Assembly: GCF_902713615.1 (NCBI RefSeq) | Contig: NC_052146.1 | Span: 69,521,238 to 69,585,237, forward strand | Source: Scyliorhinus canicula | Lineage: Eukaryota | Reading direction: 5' to 3' | Length of the DNA: 64,000 nt | Shown: one piece after another, positions 515 through 64,000 of the stretch | How positions within the stretch are numbered: the stretch's first letter is position 1 | Layout of the letters: every line of letters starts with the position of its first letter | Position numbers and translations under genes: made by a program | Notes under the pieces: generated by a model | Told to the model about the DNA's origin: nothing | The model's input: the letters and a program-made list of their open reading frames with translations, nothing else | Databases searched by the model: none

Positions 515-843
515 GGGGCCTCACGGTAGCATGGTGGTTAGCATCAATGCTTCACAGCTCCAGGGTCCCAGGTTCGATTCCCGGCTGGGTCACTGTCTGT
601 GTGGAGTCTGCACGTCCTCCCCGTGTGTGCGTGGGTTTCCTCCGGGTGCTCCGGTTTCCTCCCACAGTCCAAAGATGTGCGGGTTAGGTGGATTGGCCAT
701 GCTAAATTGCCCGTAGTGTAAGGTTAATGGGGGGATTGTTGGGTTACAGGTATAGGGTGGATACGTGGGTTTGAGTAGGGTGATCATTGTTCGGCACAAC
801 ATTGAGGGCCGAAGGGCCTGTTCTGTGCTGTACTGTTCTATAT
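515..843 (+). mobile_element. HE1-type tRNA-derived V-SINE with CR1-derived tail (young subfamily)
   Basis: Contains A/B-box-like head (tagcatggtggttagc..ggttcgattccc), V-core (ttaggtggattggccatgctaaattgccc) and CR1 3' hairpin gggccgaagggcc plus gttctat. Confidence 0.9.
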
Positions 844-12944: not shown

Positions 12945-13267
12945 TCACAAACAGTTGGACCGCGAGATACTTGTTTTCAGCGGGTTTGCCAGAGCCTCGT
13001 GTTTGACCAGACAGGAGTAAAGCTCGTGTGAGTCCCACTCTGAGGCTGACAGAGTCAGATAGCTGCTCACACTGAACGTGTTGTCCGCCTCCTGCTGGAT
13101 CCGACTGGTCTCAACTCCGTTCCCTCTGACACTGCCGTCTACAGTCCATTCAATCTCCGCAGCTCCCGGGTTAAACCCGCTCACCAAACACACCAGGGTC
13201 GCCGTGTCCTTCGCTGTGATTTGATCCGATGAAGGCGGGAGGACTGAGACCGAGGGGGCCTGCGGTG
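12945..13267 (-). CDS. IGLC: Ig lambda (type II) constant-region exon, cluster 1, intact
   Basis: Acceptor tttctctttccag, phase 1. Reads APQAPSVSVLPPSS..ATLVCLVSGFNPG..EWTVDG..FSVSSYLTL..YSCLVKHE..SRSNCL*, with both C1-set cysteines, the Trp and the penultimate inter-chain Cys. Confidence 0.95.
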
Positions 13268-14563
13268 CTGGAAAGAGAAAGAGAAACAACGATTGAAGAT
13301 CTTCTGCCAATTAGATGCAAACAGTCGAAATATTTTTTCGATCAAACTGTGCAAGTTATCTGTCATACCATGAAGGATTCAAAATGTGCCTTAACAAATC
13401 ACAGAGAGTCCACAGACCGAGACAACTATGTGATGAATTGAACAAGATCAGAGGGCATCGAGCATTTCGAATAATGAAACTGACAGACTATTCATTCTAA
13501 TTCAGATTAAATCCTGAATATCACCCGTTTGCTTCCTTTGCATTTCCCTGCAATGCTCAGTGCAGATTAGCTGTGCACATTGCGATGTAAATGTAACAGT
13601 GCTCAGCAGCCACAGCCACAGTTGGATTATTACATCCGAAATTCAGCAGAGAAACAGGCCGTCCTCTCCAACTGGACTATCCCAATATTCCGGCCCCATC
13701 CGAGTCTCCTCTCACCCTACCTCCTCTACTTCTATCTGCAAATTATTCTTTCCATTTCCCTCTCGTGCATTTATTTAATTTCACCCTAAAAATATGAGCA
13801 CTGTCCTTCTCGCCCACTCCACGCGGCGGCGAATTACACATCTCCGCTTAAAGAGATAAATCTCCGATTCTGTACTGACTTTATTAGTGACGATGTAATA
13901 GTTGCACAATCTGCATTTGGAGAAGCACGAAGGTTAAAATATCGAGTCCCGATCTGTACTGTCAGACTATGTATTCATGTCCTTGCGAGGTATTAACTCC
14001 TGCCAACACCCTGCACCCACTTTCGCAGCTCTCAATTTCCAGAGAAATGTTTCCCAGTTTCTATCATTTTTCAGAGAAAAGTCGAGTTTCTGGTTTGTTT
14101 TTCATTCGCCTCTGATTCGTAGCGAGCAATTCAGGCGCGAGGCACCGTGTAATCTAAACGCTCCCAGTTGGTTCAGAGTTTTGCTCTCTATCCACATGAT
14201 CTGCTGCCGAAAGCCAAATATTTCTGTTTGTTCCTCTGGCTTTAAAGGGGTCATGAGGGGCATGTTCTTGCTCCATTTCAGATCGCACACATGAAGCGCC
14301 GTGGTAGTAAATGTAGCAAGACGCTAAAAATAACAATCTGCTTCTTTTCCGGAAATCTTTCACGTGGGGAGGGGGAGGTAGAGAAAAGATGACGAACTGT
14401 GACATTTTGCTGCTCATGAACAGCCCAAACAGATTGTGAATATTCGCTTGAAGCTGGGATTTCTATTTATTTACTGAACCCGCGGTAGTATTCATATAAA
14501 ACGAATCAGATTGGAAGGTGCGAGTCACTTGGTGGTTGTGAGATCTGCGTGGGATCTGCATCT

Positions 14564-16536: not shown

Positions 16537-16887
16537 CGCCCAGATTCAGTTTAGTTCCTTTCCCGAAAGTGAATCCACCAGCACTGCTATCCCAGGCGCC
16601 ACAATAATAATCAGCGACATCCTCGGCCATTACATTGGAGTTGGTTAAATGCATAACATTCTTCGATGTCTCCCTTGATCCAGTGAATCGAACAGGAATC
16701 CCCGAACCTCTGGAAGAATCATAGTCCCCCCAGACAAACACAGGGGCACTGCCGGGTTTCTGCCAGTACCAGCTCGTGTAGTAGCTGTTCATGCTGCCTC
16801 CGGACATGGTGCAAGTGATTGTGACCGTTTTCCCCAGTGAAGATGAGATAGACGCAGGCTGAGTTAGCACAATCCCGGCGTTGGTAC
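16537..16887 (-). CDS. IGLV: Germline-joined VJ exon of Ig lambda (type II), cluster 1, in frame and intact
   Basis: Acceptor tttctctag and donor G|GTAAGT give a 351-nt phase 1-1 exon. Reads IVLTQPAS..TITC..WYWQKPGSAPVFVW..RFTGS..ADYYC-GAWDSSAGGFT-FGKGTKLNLG. There is no RSS between V and J. Confidence 0.95.
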
Positions 16888-17184: not shown

Positions 17185-17192
17185 ATGCAAAT
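17185..17192 (-). promoter_or_regulatory. Ig V-promoter octamer (ATTTGCAT on the sense strand)
   Basis: Perfect octamer about 125 nt upstream of the leader ATG, matching the spacing and orientation in cluster 2. Confidence 0.85.
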
Positions 17193-35939: not shown

Positions 35940-37700
35940 ATGACTTTATGAAATTATGGAAGTCGTTCTGTTCGGATGATTCCATCCTCGTTTGTTGCCG
36001 GAATAGTGGGTGGAAACAACAGGTATTTTGGTTACAATATTCAAATCTTCACTCGATATATGAGTTGCGTCAGAGAACTGGAAGACAGCAATAATTACAG
36101 CCCTGTTCAGAAAGAGAAGAGGGATAAAACAGGCGTCAAGGTTTCTGCCGCCGCCCTGGAGGTGCTGCTGCAGGTGACAACGAAACAGAGGGAGGTACTA
36201 CTCCCAGTGAAAGGGAGGAGGAGGCAAGTCAGCCTCATGGAAAAGCATGGCCAAGGAGGTCAGTAATAGAACATAGAACAGCACAGAACAGACCCTTCGG
36301 CCCTCAATGTTGTGCCGAGCCATGATCACCCTACTCAAACCCACATATCCACCCTATACCCGTAACCCAACAACCCCCCCCCTCTTAACCTTACATTTAT
36401 TAGGACACTACGGGCAATTTAGCATGGCCAATCCACCTAACCCGCACATCTTTGGACTGTGGGAGGAAACCGGAGCACGCGGAGGGAACCCACGCACACA
36501 GGGGGAGGACGTGCAGACTCCACACAGACAGTGACCCAGCCGGGAATCGAACCTGGGACCCTGGAGCTGTGAAGCATTTATGCTAACCACCATGCTACCC
36601 TGCTGCCCCCTAATGGGGAGTTACATAAACAAGCTGCAGGCAACAGCCAAATGTATTTCAATTATCTGGTGGAGTGTGGAAAGGTAAATAGCATTCACAT
36701 TAGCAAGCCCACAGCTCTGCATCTGATGAACAGCGCCTAAGAGATGTGAAGTGAGGTGGTCAACTCGTGCACCGACACGACCTGTGAGATGAGGTGTAGC
36801 TGAATACCTGCTTGAGGTACACCTCCCAGTGGTGCGCTGCTCTACATGGAAACTGGCTGAAGCTGAAGAGCACAGCCGACATATAAGAAATAAATTACAT
36901 CGTGCACGCAGGTGATCGTATGAGAAGCATCCTCACAATGCCAAGTTGGAGGGAACCACTGGCGATGCTGCGCTATTCAGAGCGATGATCAGTCTGAAGG
37001 TTCAGGGGATTGTGCATATATGGTAGTTTGCAGCACGGCATCATATCGCTGAGGGTGAGGTAGTGTAATGTGATGAATGCCCGCATCCAAACTTTTGATG
37101 AGAACTAAATATGGAATCCCTGTGAAACGTGATCAACAGAGCGGGTTCTAGTTCAAGGACAGGCAAGAGGACTTGCTTTCAAGCGCAACGACCTGAGATC
37201 AATCTTGTCCCTCCCGCAAATTCATGACGTCGTAGAGTTACGGCAAAGAGGGAAGCCATTCGGCTCATTAACCCCATTACGATGAAGGGACAATAATGGC
37301 TGAAGAACAAGATGCAGAATCTTCAGAGTATAATCCAACATTTAACGAGTTTATGTCCCATTGGTCTGGCATTCTTTCCACCAGGGAATACCCCAGCACT
37401 TAAACAGAGCCGGGCATTGACTCACGGTTAGAAAGGGTTGCAGGAGCAGGTAGGCACGGCTGGACCCGTTTTCAGGTATCCACCCGATTAGATAAGCAGT
37501 GATGGAGGAATGGCTGCATAGAACCCATAGAGTCTCTTCTAAGGCATATTTGCATTGACAGTGCATTCTCTTCCGCTTTGCTGGTGATATGAACAGTTCA
37601 TGAAGCCTCGAAAACTGCTGCTGGCGGCCCACCGGTGACGCTAGAACTCAGGCATACCGAGGCGGCCCACCACGTCCATCCCATGCACCACATGGCGCCC
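35940..37700 (+). mobile_element. Decayed Harbinger-derived element with Myb/SANT-like ORF remnant, interrupted by a young SINE (36266-36609, minus)
   Basis: VSAAALEVLLQVTTKQREVLLP..GRRR resembles the N-terminal helix of Harbinger Myb/SANT proteins. Confidence 0.5.
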
Positions 37701-40799: not shown

Positions 40800-41491
40800 G
40801 TATAATTGCGGATCCTGTCCTGACCCATAGAACATAGAACAGTACAGCACAGAACAGGCCCTTCGGCCCTCAATGTTGTGCCGAGCCATGATCACCCTAC
40901 TCAAATCCACGTATCCACCCTATACCCGTAACCCAACAACCCCCCCTTAACCTTACTTTTATTAGGACACTACGGGCAATTTAGCATGGCCAATCCACCT
41001 AACCCGCACATCTTTGGACTGTGGGAGGAAACCAGAGCACCCGGAGGAAACCCACGCACACAGGGGGAGGACGTGCAGACTCCACACAGACAGTGACCCA
41101 GCCGGGAATCGAACCTGGGACCCTGGAGCTGTGAAGCATTTATGCTAACCACCATGCTACCCTGCTGCCCAACCAGGATCCATTTCGACCTCACCAGGGG
41201 AAACGATCACGATCACCTGTACCATGTCCAGAGGCAGCATCGGCAACCCCTACACGAGCTGGTACTGGCAGAAACTCGGCAGTGCCTCTGTGTTTATTTG
41301 GTCCGAGAGCTCTGGCACACCTTCTGGTATTCCGCAACGATTCACTGGGTCTGTGGATTCATCGAGTAAAACGATGCATTTAACCATCAGCAACGTGCAA
41401 TCGGAGGACCCCGCAGATAATTACTGGCGTGTTTGGCTAAACAGTATCGGTAGATTCATTTTCGGGAGAGGAACTAAATTGAATCTGGACA
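40800..41491 (+). pseudogene. IGLV: Germline-joined lambda VJ pseudo-exon, cluster 2
   Basis: Reads IIADPVLT[SINE]QPGSISTSPGETITITC..WYWQK..RFTGSVDSS..EDPADNYW-RVWLNSIGRFI-FGRGTKLNLD|GTAAG. The SINE lies inside the Gln codon of FR1, and YYC has become NYW. Confidence 0.93.
40827..41170 (-). mobile_element. Young HE1-type SINE inserted in V exon 2
   Basis: Nearly identical to the copies at 515, 36266 and 55514. Confidence 0.92.
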
Positions 41492-43465: not shown

Positions 43466-45140
43466 TGGGGAGGGTGTCCAGGTATTGGAAAGGGGACAGA
43501 GCCAATTCAATGACGAGTGAAGATCATTTCAATGGGAGTTAATGGTCTGATCTGCTGGGACTGTCCAGAATTATGAGCCATACAGCCGACAACCCGAGGA
43601 CATGAATTTAATGGCATTGCTAAAATTATGGGATATTTTCCTTGATTCAGCGAGTGATAGGAGTGCAATTCCTGAGATGTAAGATTGCTCCAGCTGAACT
43701 ATGATCAGCTTCGGCGAGGAGACAGATAAACATTTCAAAAGCGATTCAAAAAATCAAACGTATGGAAGATTAATTCGGTGGACAGGAATGTTAAAAGGCT
43801 CGATTGGCCTCGTTCTATGGTCTGTAATTTCATGTTTCTATGAAATCTGCATCGTTGTTCAGACTAGCAATCCCACTTTAAAAGCTCGAATACAAACTAA
43901 AAACTTTCAAACGCAGCGGGCTCATTCTGCAGCAGTGCTGAGTTGTAATTGTTTTTATTGCATCGAGCCGGCGAATAAACGTTCTAACTATAACGCTAAA
44001 TCGATGTTTCTTCGTTATCATCCCCATAACCATCGGGAATAGGTTATCCACTCTATCCAGGCGTTTCATAATATTACATCCTTCAATTAAGCCTCAGCAT
44101 AGTCTGTTCCAACGAAAACAACGCTGGTCAGTTCAATATTCCTTCATAGCAGAACTTCCCCAATCCAGGCCATGCTTTTGTACATCTCCTCTGCACCATT
44201 TATGGAATAATTACATTTTTTTCTAAGTTACCAAAATTGCACATAGTGCTTGTTTTATGCAGTTTCAGAATAACCTCCCATTTATTGCATGTTGTCCTGC
44301 GGCTACTAAATGCTAATGTCCCATATGCTTCTTGGCCACCTTATCTATCAGCTCCGCCACCTTGAGGGATCGGTGGATATGCGCTCTCACATCGCTCAGT
44401 TTATCTATGTATAGTCTCCGCATTCTCCCATTTATAAACTGTGCTGCCTTGTCTTGTCAGCTTTTCCAAAATGCACCACCTCACAATTCTCCGTATTTAA
44501 CTCCATTCGAAAAGATTTGACTTATAACACGCTTGTGTTTCAAGGCGCCGTATAAATAGATGGTTAGAGCTGCTAATTGTTCCCGACATTTCAGAATGTT
44601 ATCCAGAACTCCCTGGGGTACAGGAAGATTATCCCAACATTGAAATGGGATCTAGTGGCTCTTGTCATGCGACGACTTGTTTCCACCTTTAAATTGTGAT
44701 GCAAGAAAAAACAGGTGAATTATTAGATTCAAAGACCAACTTCTGGTCAGCACTGCGGACTCATGGCGCCAAGGGCCGGTGTAGACTCGATGGGCAAAAT
44801 GACCTCCTTCTGCACTGTAAATTCGATGATTCTATAAGTGGTTTCACTGAGCGTTCCCGCAGTGGTTGTGCCAGATGTCGTGAATAATAGTATAAACAGA
44901 CAAGAGATTCATCGTGTCCGTTTACAGCATCCCTGCATTGGGTAACGTCTGACTGTATCACGGGAATTTGTATGTCATAACAATAATGAAAAGTATTGTT
45001 TTAGCGCCGACCACGGCCTGAGGACATTTAACTGACTTCTCGTTTGTCCTATTTTTTCGCAATTTATAAAAAGGAAAACATTAATTAAGTCACTAATTTT
45101 AATGTGAATGAATGCTCAATCATTTGTTTCCAATTTTCAG

Positions 45141-45463
45141 ATCCACGAGTCCCCACCGTGTCCCTCCTTCCGCCGTCATCGGATCAAATCGCAGCGAAGG
45201 ACACGGCGACCCTGGTGTGTTTGGTGAGCGGGTTTAACCCGGGAGCTGCGGAGATTGAATGGACTGTAGACGGCAGTGTCAGAGGGAATGGGGTTGAGAC
45301 CAGTCGGATCCAGCAGGAGGCGGACAACACGTTCAGTGTGAGCAGCTATCTGACTCTGTCAGCCTCAGAGTGGAACTCACACGAGCTTTACTCCTGTCTG
45401 GTCAAACACGAGGCTCTGGCAAACCCGCTTAAAAGAAGCATCTCAAGATCCAGCTGTGTCTGA
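45141..45463 (+). CDS. IGLC: Ig lambda constant exon, cluster 2 (open frame, but belongs to a V-pseudogene cluster)
   Basis: Acceptor caattttcag. Reads (N)PRVPTVSLLPPSS..ATLVCLVSGF..YSCLVKHE..SRSSCV*. AATAAA occurs at 45516-45521 and again near 45646. Confidence 0.92.
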
Positions 45464-55513: not shown

Positions 55514-55831
55514 ATAGAACAGTACAGCACAGAACAGGCCCTTCGGCCCTCAATGTTGTGCCGAGCAATGATCACCCTACTTAAACCCACGTAACCCGTA
55601 TCCCAACAATCCCCCCATTAACCTTACACTACGGGAAATTTAGCATGGCCAATCCACCTAACCCACACATCTTTGGACTGTGGGAGGAAACCGGAGCACC
55701 CGGAGGAAACCCACGCACACACGGGGAGGACGTGCAGACTCCACACAGACAGTGACCCAGCCGGGAATCGAACCTGGGACCACTGGAGCTGTGAAGCATT
55801 GATGCTAACCACCATGCTATCGTGAGGCCCC
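55514..55831 (-). mobile_element. Young HE1-type SINE inserted in a LINE fragment
   Basis: Head ggggcctcacgatagcatgg closely matches the copy at 515, and the CR1 tail is present. Confidence 0.9.
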
Positions 55832-57746: not shown

Positions 57747-58047
57747 GGGCGGCACGGTAGCATAATGGTTAGCACTGTTACTTCACGGTGCCAGGGTCCC
57801 AGGTTCGATCCCTCGGCTTGGGTCAGTGTCTGTGAGGAATCTGCACGTTCTCCCCGCGTGGGTTACCCGGGCACTCCGCTTTCTTCCCATAAGTACCAAA
57901 AGTCATGCTGTTAGGTAACTTGGACATTCTGAATTCTCCCTCAGTGTGCCCGAACAGGCGCCAGAATGTTGCGACGAGGGGCTTTTCACAGTAACTTCAT
58001 TGCAGTGTTAATGTAAGCCTACTTGTGACAATAAAGATTATTATTAT
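57747..58047 (+). mobile_element. V-SINE with (ATT)n L2-type tail
   Basis: Head and core followed by ggcttttcacagtaacttcattgcag..gacaataaagattattatt. Confidence 0.8.
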
Positions 58048-58360
58048 CAGTTAACGGAACATGTGAAATGTAGGGAAAACGTTAGAAGCTATTATTAAAA
58101 ACTTGGTGTCAGAAATTGCTGGATAGCACATAAGAAAAATCAGGGTAATCAGGTAGAAGCAGCACGCTTTTGTAAAAGGGAAATCATGTTTAATCATTTA
58201 TTGGAATTATTTCAGGAAGTAACATATATTGTGGACAAAGGGGAGCAGGTGGATGTACTGCACTTCATAGAACATAGAACATAGAACACTACAGCGCAGT
58301 ACGGGCCCTTCGGCCCTCGATGTTGCGCCGACCTGTGAAACCATCTGAAGCCTATCTGAC

Positions 58361-61252
58361 CTACACTATTCCATTTTCATCCATATGTCTATCCAGTGAC
58401 CACTTAAATGCCCTTAAAGTTGGCGAGTCTACTACTATTGCAGGCAGGGCGTTCCACACCCCGACTACTCTCTGAGTAAAGAAACTGCCTCTGACATCTG
58501 TCTTATATCTCTCACCCCTCAATTTAAAGCTATGTCCCCTCGTGTTGGTCATCACCATCCGAGGAAAAAGACTCTCACTGTCCACCCTATCTAACCCTCT
58601 GACTATCTTATATGTCTCTATTAAGTCACCTCTCAGCCTTCTCCTCTCTAATGAAAACAACCTCAATTCCCTGAGCCTTTCCTCGTAAGACCTTCCCTCC
58701 ATACCAGGCAACATCCTAGTAAATCTCCTCTGAACCCTTTCCAAAGCTTCCACATCCTTCCTATAATGTGGTGACCAGAACTGCACGCAGTACTCCAGGT
58801 GTGGCCGCACCAGAGTTATGTACAGCTGCAGCATGACCTTGTGGTTCCGAAACTCAATCCCCCTGCTTATAAAGGCTAGCACACCATATGCCTTCTTAAC
58901 AGCCCTATTAACCTGGGTGGCAACTTTCAGGGATTTATGTACCTGGATGCCGAGATCTCTCTGTTCATCTACACTACCAAGAATCTTGCCATTAGCCCAG
59001 TACTCTGCATTCCTGTTACTCCTTCCAAAGTGAACCACCTCACACTTTTCCGCATTAAACTCCATCTGCCACCTCTCAGCCCAGCTCTGCAGCTTATCTA
59101 TGTCCCTCTGTATCCTATAACATCCTTCAGCACTATCCACAACTCCACCGACCTTCGTGTCATCTGCAAATTTACTAACCCATCCTTCTACACCCTCTTC
59201 CAGGTCATTTATAAAAATGACAAACAGCAGTGGCCCCAAAACAGATCCTTGCGGTACACCACTTGTAACTGAACTCCAGGATGAACATTTGCCATCAACC
59301 ACCACCCTCTGTCTTCTTTCAGCTAGCCAATTACTGATCCAAACCGCTAAATCACCTTCAATTCCATACTTCCTTATTTTCTGCAATAGCCTACCGTGGG
59401 GAACCTTATCAAACGCCTTACTGAAATCCATATACACCACATCAACAGCTTTACCCTGATCCACCTGTTTGGTCACCTTCTCAAAAAACTCAATAAGGTT
59501 TGTGAGACATGACCTACCCTTCACAAAACCGTGTTGAGTATCGCTAATCAACTTGTTCTTTTCAAGATGATTATAAACCCTATCTCTTATAACCTTTTCC
59601 AACAGTTTACCCACAACCGAAGTAAGGCTCACAGGTCTATAATTACCAGGGTTGTCTCTACTCCCCTTCTTGAACAAGGGGACAACATTTGCTATCCTCC
59701 AGTCTTCCGGCACTATTCCTGTCGACAAAGACGACATAAAGATCAAGGACAAAGGCTCTGCAATCTCCTCCCTGGCTTCCCAGAGAATCCTAGGATAAAT
59801 CCCATCTGGCCCAGGGGACTTATCTATTTTGACATTTTCTAAAATTGCTAACACCTCCTCCTTTTGAACCTCAATTCCATCTAGCCTGGTCGACTGAACC
59901 TGAGTGTTCTCCTCGACAACATTGTCTTTCTCCAGTGTAAACACTGACGAAAAATATCCATTTAATGCTTCCCCTATCTCCTCTGATTCCACACACAACT
60001 TTCCACTACTATCCTTGATTGGCCCTAATCTTACTCGAGTCATTCTTTTGTTCCTGATATACCTATAGAAAGCCTTAGGGTTTTCCTTGATCCTATCCGC
60101 CAACGACTTTTCGTGTCCTCTCCTCGCTCTTCTTAACTCTCCCTTTAGGTCCTTCCTGGCTAACTTGTAACTCTCAAGTGCCCTAACTGAGCCTTCATGT
60201 CTCATCCTAACATAAGCCTTCTTCTTCCTCTTGACAAGTGCTTCAACTTCCTTAGTAAACCACGGCTCCCTTGCTCGACAACTTCCTCCCTGCCTGACAG
60301 GTACATACTTATCAAGGACACGCAGTAGCTGTTCCTTGAAAAAGCTCCACATTTCGATTGTACCCATCCCCTGCAGTTTCCTTCCCCATCCTATACCTCC
60401 TAAATCTTGCCGAATAGCATCATAATTGCCTTTCCCCCAGCTATAATTCTTGCCTTGCGGTATATACCTATCCCTGCCCATTGCTAAAGTAAACATAACC
60501 GAGTTGTGATCACTATCACCAAAGTGCTCACCTACATCTAAATCTAACACCTGGCCGGGTTCATTACCCAGTACCAAATCCAATGTGGCCTCGCCCCTTG
60601 TTGGCCTGTCTACATACTGTGTCAGAAAACCTTCCTGCACACACTGCACAAAAACTGACCCATCTATAGTACTCGAACTATAGTATTTCCAGTCAATATT
60701 TGGAAAGTTAAAGTCCCCCATAACAACTACCCTGTTACTCTCGCTCCTGTCAAGAATCATCTTTCCAATCCTTTCCTCTACATCTCTGGGACTATTCGGA
60801 GGTCTATAGACAACTCCCAACAGGGTGACCTCTCCTCTACTGCTCCTAACCTCGGCCCATACTGCCTCAGTAGACGAGTCCTCAAGCGTCCTTTCTACCG
60901 CCGTAATACTTTCCTTGATTAACAATGCCACACCCCCCCCTCTTTTACCATCTTCTCTGTTCTTACAGAAACATCTAAATCCTGGAACCTGCAACAACCA
61001 TTCCTGTCCCTGCTCTACCCATGTCTCCGAAATCGCCACAACATCGAGATCCCAGGTACCAACCCATGCTGCAAGCTCACCCACCTTATTCCGGATGCTC
61101 CTGGCGTTGAAGTAGACACACTTCAAACCAGCGTCCTGCTTGCCGGTGCCCTCTTTCGAACTTTTAACCCTATCCCTGACCTCACTACTCTCAACATCCT
61201 GTACACTGGGACTACAATTTAGGTTCCCATCCCCCTGCTGAATTAGTTTAAA
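58361..61252 (-). CDS. CR1 ORF2: APE endonuclease plus reverse transcriptase; the frame is open from the ORF1 overlap, with no AUG before EN motif I
   Basis: YFNARSI, SETW, GDFNFP, SDHN, YMDFSKAFD, QGSVLGP, FADD. The track start at 61126 is a TTG. The frame stays open 42 codons further upstream to TTT at 61252. Confidence 0.93.
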   Translation of the reverse strand, partial: FKLIQQGDGNLNCSPSVQDVESSEVRDRVKSSKEGTGKQDAGLKCVYFNARSIRNKVGELAAWVGTWDLDVVAISETWVEQGQEWLLQVPGFRCFCKNREDGKRGGGVALLIKESITAVERTLEDSSTEAVWAEVRSSRGEVTLLGVVYRPPNSPRDVEERIGKMILDRSESNRVVVMGDFNFPNIDWKYYSSSTIDGSVFVQCVQEGFLTQYVDRPTRGEATLDLVLGNEPGQVLDLDVGEHFGDSDHNSVMFTLAMGRDRYIPQGKNYSWGKGNYDAIRQDLGGIGWGRKLQGMGTIEMWSFFKEQLLRVLDKYVPVRQGGSCRAREPWFTKEVEALVKRKKKAYVRMRHEGSVRALESYKLARKDLKGELRRARRGHEKSLADRIKENPKAFYRYIRNKRMTRVRLGPIKDSSGKLCVESEEIGEALNGYFSSVFTLEKDNVVEENTQVQSTRLDGIEVQKEEVLAILENVKIDKSPGPDGIYPRILWEAREEIAEPLSLIFMSSLSTGIVPEDWRIANVVPLFKKGSRDNPGNYRPVSLTSVVGKLLEKVIRDRVYNHLEKNKLISDTQHGFVKGRSCLTNLIEFFEKVTKQVDQGKAVDVVYMDFSKAFDKVPHGRLLQKIRKYGIEGDLAVWISNWLAERRQRVVVDGKCSSWSSVTSGVPQGSVLGPLLFVIFINDLEEGVEGWVSKFADDTKVGGVVDSAEGCYRIQRDIDKLQSWAERWQMEFNAEKCEVVHFGRSNRNAEYWANGKILGSVDEQRDLGIQVHKSLKVATQVNRAVKKAYGVLAFISRGIEFRNHKVMLQLYITLVRPHLEYCVQFWSPHYRKDVEALERVQRRFTRMLPGMEGRSYEERLRELRLFSLERRRLRGDLIETYKIVRGLDRVDSESLFPRMVMTNTRGHSFKLRGERYKTDVRGSFFTQRVVGVWNALPAIVVDSPTLRAFKWSLDRHMDENGIV

Positions 61253-62178
61253 CCCCCCCGAAGAGCACTAGCAAATCTCCCCCCCAGGATATTGGTACCC
61301 CTCTGGTTCAGGTGAAGACCATCCTGTTTGTAGAGGTCCCACCTACCCCAGAATGAGCCCCAATTATCCAGGAAACCAAAACCCTCCCTCCTGCACCATC
61401 CCTGTAGCCACGTGTTCAACTCCTCTCTCTCCTTATTTCTCACTTCGCTAGCACGTGGCACGGGTAACAACCCAGAGATAACAACTCTGTTTGTTCTAGC
61501 TCTCAGTTTCCACCCTAGCTCCCTGAATTTCTGTCTCAAATCCCCATCTCTCTTCCTACCTATGTCGTTGGTACCTATGTGGACCACGACTTGGGGCTGC
61601 TCCCCCTCCCCCTTAAGGATCCCAAAAACACGATCAGAGACATCACGAACCCTGGCACCTGGGAGGCAACACACCAACCGTGAGTCTCTTTCGTTCCCAC
61701 AGAACCTCCTGTCTGTTCCTCTAACTATGGAGTCCCCAATGACAAGTGCTCTGTTCCTCTTCTCCCTTCCCTTCTGAGCAACAGGGACAGACTCTGTGCC
61801 AGAGACCTGCGCCCTATTGCTTACCCCTGGTAAGTCGTCCCCCGCAACAGTATCCAAAACGGTATACTTGTTATAGAGGGGAACGACCACAGGGGATCCC
61901 TGCACTGCCTGCCGGTTCCCTCTCCCTCCCCTGACGGTAACCCATCTACTTTCTTCTTTTACCTGAGGTGTGACTACCTCCCTATAACTCCTCTCAATAA
62001 CCTCCTCCGCCTCCCGAATGATCCGAAGTTCATCCAGCTCCAGCTCCCTAATGCGGCTCTCGAGGAGCTGGAGTTGGGTGCACTTCCCGCAGATGTAATC
62101 AGAAGGGACACTAGAGGTGACCCTTTCCTCCCACATTCTGCAGGAGGAACATTCAACTGCCCTAGCCTCCATTCCCAC
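61243..62178 (-). CDS. CR1 ORF1: CxxC..CxxC zinc finger/coiled coil plus SGNH esterase domain (311 aa)
   Basis: CSSC..CGKC and the esterase blocks GDS, PGA, GTND and DGLH. Confidence 0.92.
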   Translation of the reverse strand: MGMEARAVECSSCRMWEERVTSSVPSDYICGKCTQLQLLESRIRELELDELRIIREAEEVIERSYREVVTPQVKEESRWVTVRGGRGNRQAVQGSPVVVPLYNKYTVLDTVAGDDLPGVSNRAQVSGTESVPVAQKGREKRNRALVIGDSIVRGTDRRFCGNERDSRLVCCLPGARVRDVSDRVFGILKGEGEQPQVVVHIGTNDIGRKRDGDLRQKFRELGWKLRARTNRVVISGLLPVPRASEVRNKEREELNTWLQGWCRREGFGFLDNWGSFWGRWDLYKQDGLHLNQRGTNILGGRFASALRGGLN

Positions 62179-62337
62179 TGAACTAACTTCCCAACTACTG
62201 AAAAATAAAAAACTTGTTAGTTTAGCAATCCAATGGACAGAGCTTTTTTTTTGGTTAGAGGAGGAGGATGGGTGGGAGACACTACGTAAGTAGTGTTTCG
62301 GGTAAAGCTGTCACTCGAGAACAGCCCCTTCACAAAC

Positions 62338-64000
62338 CACCTTCAACTTACGCTGACCGCACTGCACGTATGCAAATCTCCCCGGAACAGCCAATCAGAA
62401 GCTCTGCTCTGCTGCCCTCTGCTGGATGCTCACCTTCCGTCGAACTCCTCGGGTCACTGATGCAGGTGCACCTTCAACTTACGCTGACCGCACTGCACGT
62501 ATGTAAATCTCCCCGGAACAGCCAATCAGAAGCTCTGCTCTGCTGCCCTCTGCTGGATGCTCACCTTCCGTCGAACTCCTCGGGTCACTGATGCAGGTGC
62601 ACCTTCAACTTACGCTGACCGCACTGCACGTATGCAAATCTCCCCGGAACAGCCAATCAGAAGCTCTGCTCTGCTGCCCTCTGCTGGATGCTCACCTTCC
62701 GTCGAACTCCTCGGGTCACTGATGCAGGTGCACCTTCAACTTACGCTGACCGCACTGCACGTATGTAAATCTCCCCGGAACAGCCAATCAGAAGCTCTGC
62801 TCTGCTGCCCTCTGCTGGATGCTCACCTTCCGTCGAACTCCTCGGGTCACTGATGCAGGTGCACCTTCAACTTACGCTGACCGCACTGCACGTATGCAAA
62901 TCTCCCCGGAACAGCCAATCAGAAGCTCTGCTCTGCTGCCCTCTGCTGGATGCTCACCTTCCGTCGAACTCCTCGGGTCACTGATGCAGGTGCACCTTCA
63001 ACTTACGCTGACCGCACTGCACGTATGCAAATCTCCCCGGAACAGCCAATCAGAAGCTCTGCTCTGCTGCCCTCTGCTGGATGCTCACCTTCCGTCGAAC
63101 TCCTCGGGTCACTGATGCAGGTGCACCTTCAACTTACGCTGACCGCACTGCACGTATGTAAATCTCCCCGGAACAGCCAATCAGAAGCTCTGCTCTGCTG
63201 CCCTCTGCTGGATGCTCACCTTCCGTCGAACTCCTCGGGTCACTGATGCAGGTGCACCTTCAACTTACGCTGACCGCACTGCACGTATGCAAATCTCCCC
63301 GGAACAGCCAATCAGAAGCTCTGCTCTGCTGCCCTCTGCTGGATGCTCACCTTCCGTCGAACTCCTCGGGTCACTGATGCAGGTGCACCTTCAACTTACG
63401 CTGACCGCACTGCACGTATGCAAATCTCCCCGGAACAGCCAATCAGAAGCTCTGCTCTGCTGCCCTCTGCTGGATGCTCACCTTCCGTCGAACTCCTCGG
63501 GTCCCTGATGCAGGTGCACCTTCAACTTACGCTGACCGCACTGCACGTATGTAAATCTCCCCGCAACAGCCAATCAGAAGCTCTGCTCTGCTGCCCTCTG
63601 CTGGATGCTCACCTTCCGTCGAACTCCTCGGGTCACTGATGCAGGTGCACCTTCAACTTACGCTGACCGCACTGCACGTATGCAAATCTCCCCGGAACAG
63701 CCAATCAGAAGCTCTGCTCTGCTGCCCTCTGCTGGATGCTCACCTTCCGTCGAACTCCTCGGGTCACTGATGCAGGTGCACCTTCAACTTACGCTGACCG
63801 CACTGCACGTATGCAAATCTCCCCGGAACAGCCAATCAGAAGCTCTGCTCTGCTGCCCTCTGCTGGATGCTCACCTTCCGTCGAACTCCTCGGGTCACTG
63901 ATGCAGGTGCACCTTCAACTTACGCTGACCGCACTGCACGTATGCAAATCTCCCCGGAACAGCCAATCAGAAGCTCTGCTCTGCTGCCCTCTGCTGGATG
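62338..64000. repeat. 131-bp tandem array (at least 12.7 units, running off the window) fused to the CR1 5' end
   Basis: Exact 131-bp period. There are 13 octamer positions from 62370 (9 ATGCAAAT, 4 ATGTAAAT), 13 CCAAT from 62391 and 12 CAGGTG from 62463. Confidence 0.97.

What the first reader, a model, noticed from the sequence alone, without database searches (positions are those of the whole stretch)
62338..64000. CR1 5' end amplified into a tandem array of octamer, E-box and CCAAT motifs near Ig genes
Each 131-bp unit carries ATGCAAAT (the Oct-1/Oct-2 site used by both V promoters here), GCAGGTG (kappa-E2/mu-E5-type E2A site) and CCAAT. The last unit runs seamlessly into the CR1 5' UTR, like the tandem promoter monomers of mouse L1. 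The result is at least 9 perfect octamers and 12 E-boxes in 1.7 kb, about 17 kb 3' of lambda C2. Hypothesis 1 is that this is a monomer-type LINE promoter expanded to unusual length. Hypothesis 2 is that it acts as a B-cell-responsive enhancer cluster or drives CR1 expression in lymphocytes. The motifs are seen directly; function is inference.
Basis: partly seen in the sequence, partly recalled or inferred. Interest (0 to 1): 0.7.

Follow-up and report, generated by a model that had tools for sequence, protein, structure and literature searches.

The report
Repeated promoter-like head of shark CR1

Summary
Window 62338-64000 holds 12.7 head-to-tail 131-bp units with only 6 substitutions, running off the window end. 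It contains 9 ATGCAAAT, 12 GCAGGTG and 13 AGCCAATCAG.

The array lies directly 5' of an apparently intact minus-strand CR1-like LINE. That element has an esterase ORF1, an APE+RT ORF2, and a hairpin plus (GTTCTAT)3 tail.

The monomer is the family's own 5' end, not a local satellite:
- RNA-type contigs from two studies carry the same monomer/UTR/ORF1 junction, with an 8-bp insertion this copy lacks.
- Monomer k-mer depth is roughly 3.5 units per ORF1 genome-wide.
- Poly(A) RNA reads cover the monomers in LINE sense.

The array is CpG-island-like. A locus-specific octamer-killing variant recurs in units 2, 4, 7 and 10, which points to growth by 2- and 3-unit block duplications.

There are 13 hits against 0.02 expected.

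Promoter function is inferred: no start sites were seen. Nothing supports a B-cell role.

The scan has met this same 131-bp monomer family before on other DNA of this genome, with 1.6 to 59 units. I found no paper describing CR1 monomer heads.

The parts
62338..64000 (-). Tandem array of 131-bp monomers, 12.7 units inside the window. It continues beyond the window end; an earlier scan note gives 2186 nt in all. It is the 5' head of the LINE.
   Evidence: TRF. Unit-by-unit comparison shows 6 substitutions in 1663 nt, GC 57% and CpG o/e 0.70. No monomer copy occurs elsewhere in the window.
62370..62377 (+). Octamer ATGCAAAT of unit 1 (ATTTGCAT on the LINE sense strand). It recurs every 131 bp and is changed to ATGTAAAT in units 2, 4, 7 and 10.
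62389..62398 (+). Extended CCAAT / NF-Y-type box AGCCAATCAG of unit 1. It reads as a Y-box, CTGATTGGCT, on the LINE sense strand, and is present in all 13 units.
   Evidence: 13 hits in the array, 4 elsewhere, 3.19 expected in the window
62411..62425 (-). Perfect match to the 15-nt CTCF core consensus (CCAGCAGAGGGCAGC) in unit 1. There is one per unit, all on the minus strand, and the motif contains no CpG.
   Evidence: 13 hits against 0.02 expected; only one other 1-mismatch site in 64 kb
62462..62468 (+). E-box GCAGGTG at the unit junction. There are 12 copies. It forms the 8-bp palindrome GGTGCACC with the start of the next unit.
62179..62337 (-). Unique 5' UTR ('tether') between the last monomer and ORF1. 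It shows no similarity to the monomer. It holds an A9 run and a branch-point/polypyrimidine/CAG string just before the ORF1 ATG.
   Evidence: unspliced contigs span it (records 8 and 24)
61243..62178 (-). ORF1, 311 aa (ATG at 62172). It has an N-terminal CxxC...CxxC motif, a coiled-coil-like stretch and a GDSL/SGNH esterase domain.
   Evidence: Pfam PF13472 at 3.5e-14; PDB 4c1b ORF1-encoded protein at 1.2e-26
58361..61126 (-). ORF2, an open frame of 921 aa with apurinic-type endonuclease and reverse transcriptase domains.
   Evidence: Pfam PF03372 at 4.6e-20 and PF00078 at 1.8e-36
58266..58360 (-). Short 3' UTR with a GC-rich hairpin followed by the (GTTCTAT)3 microsatellite tail, with no poly(A). 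This is the 3' end of the element.
   Evidence: The hairpin is present but not better than shuffles (z -0.69).

Best explanation
The array is the repeated 5' untranslated head of a young, apparently intact CR1-like LINE on the minus strand. The layout is monomers, then a 159-nt unique tether, then ORF1 (esterase), then ORF2 (APE+RT), then a hairpin and a (GTTCTAT)n tail.

The 131-bp monomer is the normal 5' end of this abundant catshark family. It most likely serves as its internal RNA polymerase II promoter, in the way the roughly 200-bp monomers of mouse L1 do. Each unit is a CpG-rich cassette with an NF-Y-type CCAAT box, an octamer, an E-box and a CTCF core.

Shown:
- the anatomy;
- that the monomer belongs to the family;
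- that monomer sequence occurs in poly(A)-primed RNA in LINE sense.

Inferred:
- that transcription starts inside the monomers;
- that the named factors bind.

This copy has far more units than the family average (at least 12.7 here, about 16.7 by an overlapping-window note). Blocks of 2 and 3 units appear to have been duplicated at or near this locus by unequal exchange or replication slippage.

Its position between Ig light-chain clusters is best read as a chance insertion of a very common element.
For: Anatomy:
- The array, tether, ORFs and tail are contiguous and co-oriented.
- Domains are confirmed by Pfam and PDB.

The monomer belongs to the family:
- A 314-nt contig in two RNA-type runs from different studies spans 62063-62367, from the ORF1 start through the UTR into the monomer.
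- That contig carries an 8-bp insertion and a 1-bp insertion, so it comes from another copy with the same junction (table 4 and records 8 and 24).
- DNA k-mer depth over the two monomer bins is 150,809 plus 90,318, against about 69,000 over ORF1. That is roughly 3.5 units per ORF1 equivalent.
- Earlier scan notes list the same monomer at other loci with 1.6, 2.7, 7, 9, 12.7 and 59 units. These are leads only.

Promoter-like nature:
- GC is 57% and CpG o/e 0.70, against 47% and 0.44 in the LINE body, and 88 CpGs remain in the array.
- Four canonical motifs sit in each 131-bp unit.
- Raw poly(A) RNA reads cover the monomer bins, 116 in LINE-sense orientation against 13 antisense.
- The chicken CR1-H 5' UTR is a demethylated CpG-island promoter and start site in oocytes (bioRxiv 10.64898/2026.03.19.712899).
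- Mouse and rat L1 5' UTRs are monomer arrays joined to ORF1 by a tether (PMC5381506).

Local growth:
- The C-to-T change at unit position 36 recurs in units 2, 4, 7 and 10.
- Family-wide RNA reads show C at that site in 60 of 62 reads.
Against: - No transcription start was seen. table 6 reports no places where molecules begin, and the only raw-read run is a single-cell poly(A) library.
- In that library, coverage and strand bias may largely reflect internal priming at A-rich runs. The A9 run lies just 3' of the monomers in LINE sense.
- The two 'RNA?' runs are RNA by guess only.
- K-mer depths are summed over contigs and are not copy numbers.
- The unique-UTR bin is oddly low (9,718), so ratios depend on the chosen denominator.
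- The 5' boundary of the array and any target-site duplication lie outside the window.
- Short-read contigs cannot confirm the array length.
- CR1 versus L2 placement was not tested by RT phylogeny. The ORF1 PDB match is a zebrafish L2-type element.
Confidence: 0.75

Rival explanations
1. CTCF-site array (compatible with the promoter reading). CTCF binds the core motif in each monomer. The array would then be a cluster of about 13-17 same-orientation CTCF sites that shields the LINE promoter from its surroundings. It might act as a boundary or loop anchor between neighbouring Ig light-chain clusters, in the way B2 SINEs spread CTCF sites in mouse or the gypsy 5' UTR carries 12 Su(Hw) sites.
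For: - There are 13 perfect matches to CCASYAGRKGGCRSY, all on the minus strand, against 0.02 expected in the window. Only one other 1-mismatch site exists in 64 kb.
- That is about 4e-5 per random 131-bp unit, the one motif that survives a look-elsewhere correction.
- The motif contains no CpG (consensus).
- The CTCF motif and its orientation code operate in an elasmobranch, the little skate (PMC10115646).
- Retrotransposons are known carriers of CTCF sites (PMC3368268).
- The minus-strand motifs point toward the Ig cluster at 36-45 kb.
Against: - There are no occupancy, accessibility, methylation or contact data.
- Young repeats are usually silenced, and TE-borne CTCF motifs are often masked by H3K9me3 (titles and abstracts).
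- Every family copy carries the motif, so nothing is specific to this locus.
- No forward-oriented partner motif was found in the window.
Confidence: 0.2
2. B-cell-responsive enhancer cluster, or lymphocyte-specific driver of CR1. Oct-2/OBF-1 and E2A would bind the octamers and E-boxes and act on the neighbouring Ig genes or on the LINE.
For: - There are 9 octamers and 12 CAGGTG E-boxes in 1.66 kb.
- Ig C exons lie 16.9 kb away, and the VJ gene at 16601-16813 has an octamer about 370 bp upstream.
Against: - The motifs come with every copy of an abundant LINE family (earlier notes, including copies near non-Ig genes).
- The same octamer is bound by ubiquitous Oct-1 and by POU5-class factors, and CAGGTG also by ZEB/Snail repressors (established knowledge). 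The strings therefore do not imply B-cell specificity.
- Four of the 12 complete units in the window have lost the octamer.
- The copy-specific T variant is in only 2 of 62 monomer RNA reads.
- Selection on a LINE promoter acts in the germline or early embryo, not in B cells (inference).
Confidence: 0.05
3. The array is not part of the LINE, or is not real. Either it is an unrelated satellite that the LINE landed beside, or its length is an assembly artefact.
For: - The 5' end of the array and any target-site duplication are outside the window.
- Short-read contigs cannot span 1.7-2.2 kb of 99.6%-identical repeats.
Against: - The same monomer/UTR/ORF1 junction occurs in contigs from other copies in two studies.
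- Several other loci have been reported by the scan.
- The units carry an ordered pattern of one recurrent and two singleton variants, not a featureless loop.
- An array of about 2 kb is well inside long-read length (inference).
Confidence: 0.04

Closest known systems
Monomeric 5' UTR promoters of mouse and rat L1 (A, Tf, Gf, F monomers plus tether)
   Same: - Head-to-tail monomers sit at the extreme 5' end, joined to ORF1 by a unique tether.
- They are CpG-island-like.
- Unit number varies between copies.
- The layout is described in PMC5381506.
   Different: - The LINE clade differs: here ORF1 is an esterase and the tail is a microsatellite, not poly(A).
- The unit is 131 bp, against about 200 bp in mouse and about 650 bp in rat.
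- There is no YY1 core (GCCAT/ATGGC) in the unit (read from the consensus).
- The motif set is CTCF, NF-Y, octamer and E-box.
- Arrays reach at least 12.7 units here, and 59 at another locus according to an unchecked earlier scan note.
- Promoter activity is not shown here.
Chicken CR1-H 5' UTR promoter
   Same: It is a CR1-type LINE whose 5' UTR is a CpG island. That UTR is demethylated and used as a start site in oocytes (bioRxiv 10.64898/2026.03.19.712899).
   Different: That paper describes no tandem monomers in the CR1-H 5' UTR. Here the CpG-rich part is a tandem array.
Retrotransposon-borne CTCF or insulator sites (mouse B2 SINE; Drosophila gypsy 5' UTR with 12 Su(Hw) sites)
   Same: A mobile element carries consensus sites for an architectural protein and spreads them (PMC3368268). 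The gypsy comparison, with sites clustered in the 5' UTR, rests on my own knowledge.
   Different: B2 carries one site per copy, whereas here there is one per 131-bp unit, in arrays. Binding is not shown here.
Satellites and minisatellites born from parts of transposable elements
   Same: A segment of a TE is amplified in place into a longer tandem array (review PMC9659126).
   Different: The examples listed there for LINEs derive from ORF2 or 3' parts. Here it is the 5' promoter-like head, still attached to an apparently intact element.

Membership tests
Monomer-type LINE 5' UTR (mouse/rat L1 layout) | Head-to-tail monomers at the extreme 5' end, co-oriented with the element and joined to ORF1 by a unique tether | tested here: met
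   The array is at 62338-64000, the tether at 62179-62337 and ORF1 starts at 62178/62172, all on the minus strand.
Monomer-type LINE 5' UTR (mouse/rat L1 layout) | The same monomers head other copies of the family | tested here: met
   Contigs from two studies span the monomer/UTR/ORF1 junction and differ from this copy by indels. Monomer k-mer depth is about 3.5 times ORF1 depth. Earlier scan notes of other loci are unchecked.
Monomer-type LINE 5' UTR (mouse/rat L1 layout) | CpG-rich, CpG-island-like monomers | tested here: met
   GC is 57% and CpG o/e 0.70 over 1663 nt, against 0.44 in the LINE body.
Monomer-type LINE 5' UTR (mouse/rat L1 layout) | Transcription starts within the monomers, which have promoter activity | tested here: inconclusive
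   Monomer sequence is present in poly(A) RNA reads in LINE sense (116 against 13). No start sites were resolved, and internal priming may explain the pile-up (tables 2 and 6).
L1 clade | L1-type ORF1 (coiled coil, RRM, CTD) and a poly(A) tail | tested here: not met
   ORF1 is a GDSL/SGNH esterase and the tail is (GTTCTAT)3. The element works like an L1 monomer head but is not an L1.
CR1 clade of LINEs | ORF2 with an APE endonuclease and a reverse transcriptase | tested here: met
   PF03372 at 4.6e-20 and PF00078 at 1.8e-36.
CR1 clade of LINEs | ORF1 with an esterase domain preceded by a Cys-rich finger. This type is shared by CR1 and L2 (own knowledge: Kapitonov and Jurka 2003; Kajikawa et al. 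1997). | tested here: met
   PF13472 at 3.5e-14, PDB 4c1b at 1.2e-26, and an N-terminal CxxC...CxxC motif in the translation.
CR1 clade of LINEs | Short 3' UTR ending in a hairpin plus a short microsatellite of the ATTCTRTG type, with no poly(A) (own knowledge: Suh 2015) | tested here: met
   The 95-nt 3' UTR has a GC-rich hairpin and then (GTTCTAT)3 followed by G. The unit is 7 nt, not 8, and the fold is not better than shuffles.
CR1 clade of LINEs | RT phylogeny places the element in CR1 rather than L2 or Rex1 | not tested
   No reference RT set was at hand, and the large protein searches were spared.
B-cell octamer/E-box enhancer | Octamer and E2A-type E-box present | tested here: met
B-cell octamer/E-box enhancer | A feature of the Ig locus rather than of a dispersed repeat | tested here: not met
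   The monomer is abundant genome-wide and heads other LINE copies.
B-cell octamer/E-box enhancer | B-cell-specific accessibility or activity | not testable with these tools
   No tissue- or cell-resolved data were available. The only raw-read run is an unsorted single-cell library.
TE-borne CTCF sites | Match to the CTCF core consensus | tested here: met
   13 of 13 units match perfectly, against 0.02 expected per window.
TE-borne CTCF sites | CTCF occupancy in vivo | not testable with these tools
   No ChIP or ATAC data were available.

The most novel reading that the evidence does not exclude
The CR1 monomer is an 'insulated promoter' cassette. CTCF really binds its CpG-free core motif, so this abundant family has seeded the catshark genome with clustered, same-orientation CTCF anchors. 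Long arrays such as this one have about 17 sites facing an Ig light-chain cluster and lie between two clusters. They would act as boundaries or loop anchors at antigen-receptor loci, a shark counterpart of the clustered CTCF elements that flank mammalian Ig loci.
Probability: 0.15. Interest if true: 0.7.

Novelty: new variant of a known kind. Interest (0 to 1): 0.4.

Why it matters
Monomer-built LINE promoters are textbook for rodent L1 only. A CR1-clade family with the same architecture would be a case of convergent evolution, and it bears on an old puzzle: how can a LINE whose transcripts start inside its own promoter keep that promoter? Block duplication of units, as seen here, is one answer.

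The family also turns a promoter into minisatellite-like DNA while still attached to an apparently intact element. Every unit carries a perfect CTCF core, so a very abundant shark repeat may shape chromatin architecture.

For the Ig locus itself, the practical message is cautionary. Octamers and E-boxes near shark antibody genes can simply be LINE cargo.

Tried and rejected
- Monomer copies elsewhere in the window: blastn found none. The older CR1 fragments at 26.6, 46-48, 50-51 and 52 kb are only 63-72% identical and have no monomers.
- Similarity between the tether and the monomer: none.
- An intron in the 5' UTR. Each monomer has a GTAAGT donor, and a CTAAC branch point, polypyrimidine tract and CAG lie 30 nt before the ORF1 ATG. 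No spliced reads or contigs were found, and contigs are unspliced. Rejected for now.
- RNA structure of the monomer dimer and of the 3' UTR: neither is better than shuffles (z -1.14 and -0.69).
- Histone H2B-type promoter, suggested by an earlier first-reader note: CCAAT and octamer are present, but no TATA follows the octamer in LINE sense (read from the consensus).
- The + strand ORFs of 98 aa that repeat through the array are by-products of the 131-bp period, antisense to the LINE.
- Literature searches for CR1 or other non-L1 LINE monomer heads, and for catshark repeats, returned no description of this. The library is incomplete, so this is not proof of novelty.
- The findings search by sequence was blank.
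- Strand bias of the RNA reads as proof of autonomous transcription: set aside, because a poly(A)-primed single-cell library favours A-rich priming sites.
- An excess of opposite-strand reads at 61875-62168 has the same possible explanation.

Full report
**Observation**

Reading the sequence and Tandem Repeats Finder agree. Window 62338-64000 is one tandem array of a 131-bp unit, 12.7 copies, 99% matches, no indels, cut off by the end of the window.

A unit-by-unit comparison finds only six substitutions in 1663 nt:
- C to T at unit position 36 in units 2, 4, 7 and 10;
- a singleton in unit 9;
- a singleton in unit 10.

- ATGCAAAT occurs 9 times in the array.
- GCAGGTG occurs 12 times.
- CCAAT is in every unit, as the extended NF-Y-type form AGCCAATCAG, 13 times.

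The position-36 change is exactly what turns ATGCAAAT into ATGTAAAT in four units. The E-box occupies the last seven bases of the unit, so it sits at unit junctions.

All these counts descend from one 131-bp sequence copied many times. The statistical question is therefore per unit, not per array. Scaling the window expectations to 131 bp gives about 0.009 for the octamer, 0.017 for the E-box and 0.007 for the extended CCAAT box. Each is unremarkable alone, given how many motifs one could look for.

**Surroundings**

The array is the upstream end of a LINE on the minus strand. Going leftward from the array:
- a 159-nt unique stretch (62337-62179) with no similarity to the monomer;
- ORF1 (62178-61243, 311 aa), with an N-terminal CxxC...CxxC motif and a GDSL/SGNH esterase domain (Pfam PF13472, 3.5e-14);
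- ORF1's one PDB match at the E 0.01 cut-off used is the esterase of an 'ORF1-encoded protein' (4c1b, 1.2e-26), which I take from my own knowledge to be zebrafish ZfL2-1;
- ORF2 (61126-58361, 921 aa open), with endonuclease (PF03372) and reverse transcriptase (PF00078) domains;
- a 95-nt 3' UTR with a GC-rich hairpin, ending in (GTTCTAT)3 at 58266-58288, with no poly(A).

This is the build of the CR1/L2 group, and the hairpin-plus-microsatellite tail is the CR1 signature (own knowledge). An RT phylogeny was not done, so 'CR1-like' is the safe name.

The Ig context is real. C1-set exons lie at 45134-45436(+) and 12972-13274(-). A germline-joined VJ lies at 16601-16813(-). The array starts 16.9 kb from the nearer C exon. 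The 'lambda' isotype was not tested.

**Is the monomer the family's own 5' end?**

Several lines say yes.

1. In two RNA-type contig sets from different studies, the same 314-nt contig spans 62063-62367, from the start of ORF1 through the unique UTR into the first monomer. It carries an 8-bp and a 1-bp insertion relative to this copy (table 4, records 8 and 24). At least one other copy therefore has the identical junction.
2. In a DNA run, summed k-mer depth is 150,809 and 90,318 over the two monomer bins, against about 69,000 over ORF1 and about 500,000 at the 3' end (table 2). That is the usual 5'-truncation gradient plus roughly 3.5 monomer equivalents per ORF1 equivalent. The tool warns that these depths are not copy numbers. 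The unique-UTR bin is oddly low (9,718), probably because of indel variants, so this is an order-of-magnitude statement.
3. The scan's own earlier notes report the same 131-bp monomer heading CR1 copies on other pieces of this genome, named there as the small-spotted catshark. Reported unit counts are about 1.6, 2.7, 7, 9, 12.7 and 59, and other CR1 subfamilies have different monomers.
   - I treat these as leads. My depth ratio agrees with their 'short head is normal' statement.
   - An overlapping-window note gives this array 2186 nt in all, about 16.7 units. I could not read past the window.

The catshark genome paper reports LINEs as 34% of the genome and as the recently active class (PMC11979771).

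**Promoter-like properties**

The array has 57% GC and CpG o/e 0.70 over 1.66 kb. The LINE body has 47% and 0.44, and the window 0.55. The array is therefore CpG-island-like, and 88 CpGs remain in it.

In LINE sense, each unit reads: CTCF core, then Y-box (CTGATTGGCT), then an ETS-like GGAA, then ATTTGCAT, then the E-box at the junction.

I checked it after seeing it in earlier notes:
- CCASYAGRKGGCRSY matches perfectly 13 times, once per unit, all on the minus strand.
- 0.02 matches are expected in the whole window.
- Only one other site in 64 kb comes within one mismatch.
- Per random 131-bp unit that is about 4e-5, so this is the one motif that stays notable after allowing for motif shopping.
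- It contains no CpG.

CTCF motifs with the usual orientation code mark TAD boundaries in an elasmobranch, the little skate (PMC10115646).

**Expression**

The only raw-read run is a poly(A) single-cell RNA library.
- Reads cover the whole element, mostly with the first mate on the + strand, which is LINE sense for such libraries.
- They cover the monomer bins 116 against 13, and 43 against 3.
- So RNAs containing monomers in LINE sense exist.
- No start sites were detected (table 6). The pile-up in the proximal monomer lies just upstream of an A9 run in the UTR, and an opposite-strand excess at 61875-62168 lies upstream of an A-rich run on the other strand. Internal priming may explain both.
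- Transcription from within the monomers is therefore inferred, by analogy with two cases: mouse and rat L1 monomers (PMC5381506), and the chicken CR1-H 5' UTR, a demethylated CpG-island start site in oocytes.

**How this copy grew**

The T at unit position 36 is rare in the family. Of 62 first-mate-plus RNA reads laid across that site, 60 have C (table 3). Here it sits in units 2, 4, 7 and 10, giving the pattern CT CT CCT CCT CCC.

The simplest history has four steps:
1. one mutation;
2. duplication of a 2-unit block;
3. duplication of a 3-unit block;
4. two later point changes.

This is growth by unequal exchange or slippage at or near this locus, not unit-by-unit addition. It also means this copy contributes little to the monomer RNA pool in that sample.

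The ordered variants argue against an assembly loop. Short-read contigs cannot confirm the length.

Hypothesis 1, a monomer-type LINE promoter expanded beyond the usual, fits all of the above, with promoter activity still unproven.

Hypothesis 2, a B-cell enhancer or lymphocyte-specific driver, has nothing in its favour beyond the strings themselves:
- The strings travel with every copy of an abundant family.
- The octamer is equally a site for ubiquitous Oct-1 and POU5-class factors, and CAGGTG for ZEB/Snail repressors (established knowledge).
- A third of the units here have lost the octamer.
- Selection on a LINE promoter acts in the germline and early embryo (inference).

The more interesting open possibility is the CTCF one: an array of same-orientation CTCF cores facing the Ig cluster, lying between Ig clusters. 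Retrotransposon-borne CTCF sites are well known from B2 SINEs (PMC3368268), but such sites are often masked. I have no occupancy data.

**Novelty and verdict**

In the library searched I found no description of monomer heads in CR1-type LINEs or of this catshark family. Reviews of TE-derived tandem repeats list ORF2- or 3'-derived cases for LINEs. The library is partial, so this is absence of evidence.

I class it as a new variant of a known kind: the rodent-L1 monomer architecture arising in a CR1-like element, with a different motif set and a tendency to grow into minisatellite-like arrays.

This particular locus is one more instance of something the scan has already met several times on other DNA of the same genome. 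Its Ig neighbourhood does not make it special on present evidence.

No contig was taken for human, and no N stretches were involved.

Noticed in passing
window 62198-62230 (minus strand) and unit positions 9-14 of every monomer: In LINE sense the unique 5' UTR ends with a textbook 3' splice site: a CTAAC branch point, a long T-rich tract and CAG, 30 nt before the ORF1 ATG. Every monomer holds a GTAAGT donor-like string. No spliced read or contig was seen, and contigs run through unspliced.
   Followed up: partly
window 61875-62168: In the poly(A) single-cell RNA run, opposite-strand reads (103 and 69 per bin) exceed LINE-sense reads only over the first 300 nt of ORF1. This could be an antisense promoter as in human L1, or internal priming at the A-rich run at 62200-62213 on host read-through RNA.
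   Followed up: no
window 62423-62427 joined to 59036-59043: A DNA contig and two RNA reads join a monomer directly to the middle of ORF2. This suggests an internally deleted family variant that keeps the monomer head.
   Followed up: no
window 791-841, 2632-2690, 36266-36318, 40826-40884, 55514-55564: Five short matches (51-60 nt, 80-90% identity) to the last ~60 nt of the LINE, the hairpin and tail region. They are either extremely 5'-truncated copies or SINEs that borrow this CR1 tail.
   Followed up: no
window 16601-16813 (minus strand): An Ig light-chain V region already joined to J in the germline (...YYC GAWDSSAGGFT FGKGTKLNLG in one frame), with an octamer at 17185 upstream.
   Followed up: partly
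window 57760-58030: A tRNA-related SINE-like sequence (T-arm-like TCGAACC core) lies just beyond the 3' end of the LINE.
   Followed up: no
window 61127-61242: ORF2 has no ATG at its listed start (TTG) and lies in a different frame from ORF1, after a 116-nt gap. How ORF2 is translated is open. Another first-stage note proposes a -1 frameshift.
   Followed up: no
window 62206 and 62243: The contigs present in RNA-type runs carry an 8-bp insertion (AAAAATTA on the + strand) and an extra T in the unique 5' UTR relative to this copy. The expressed or commonest subfamily therefore differs from this copy in the tether.
   Followed up: no
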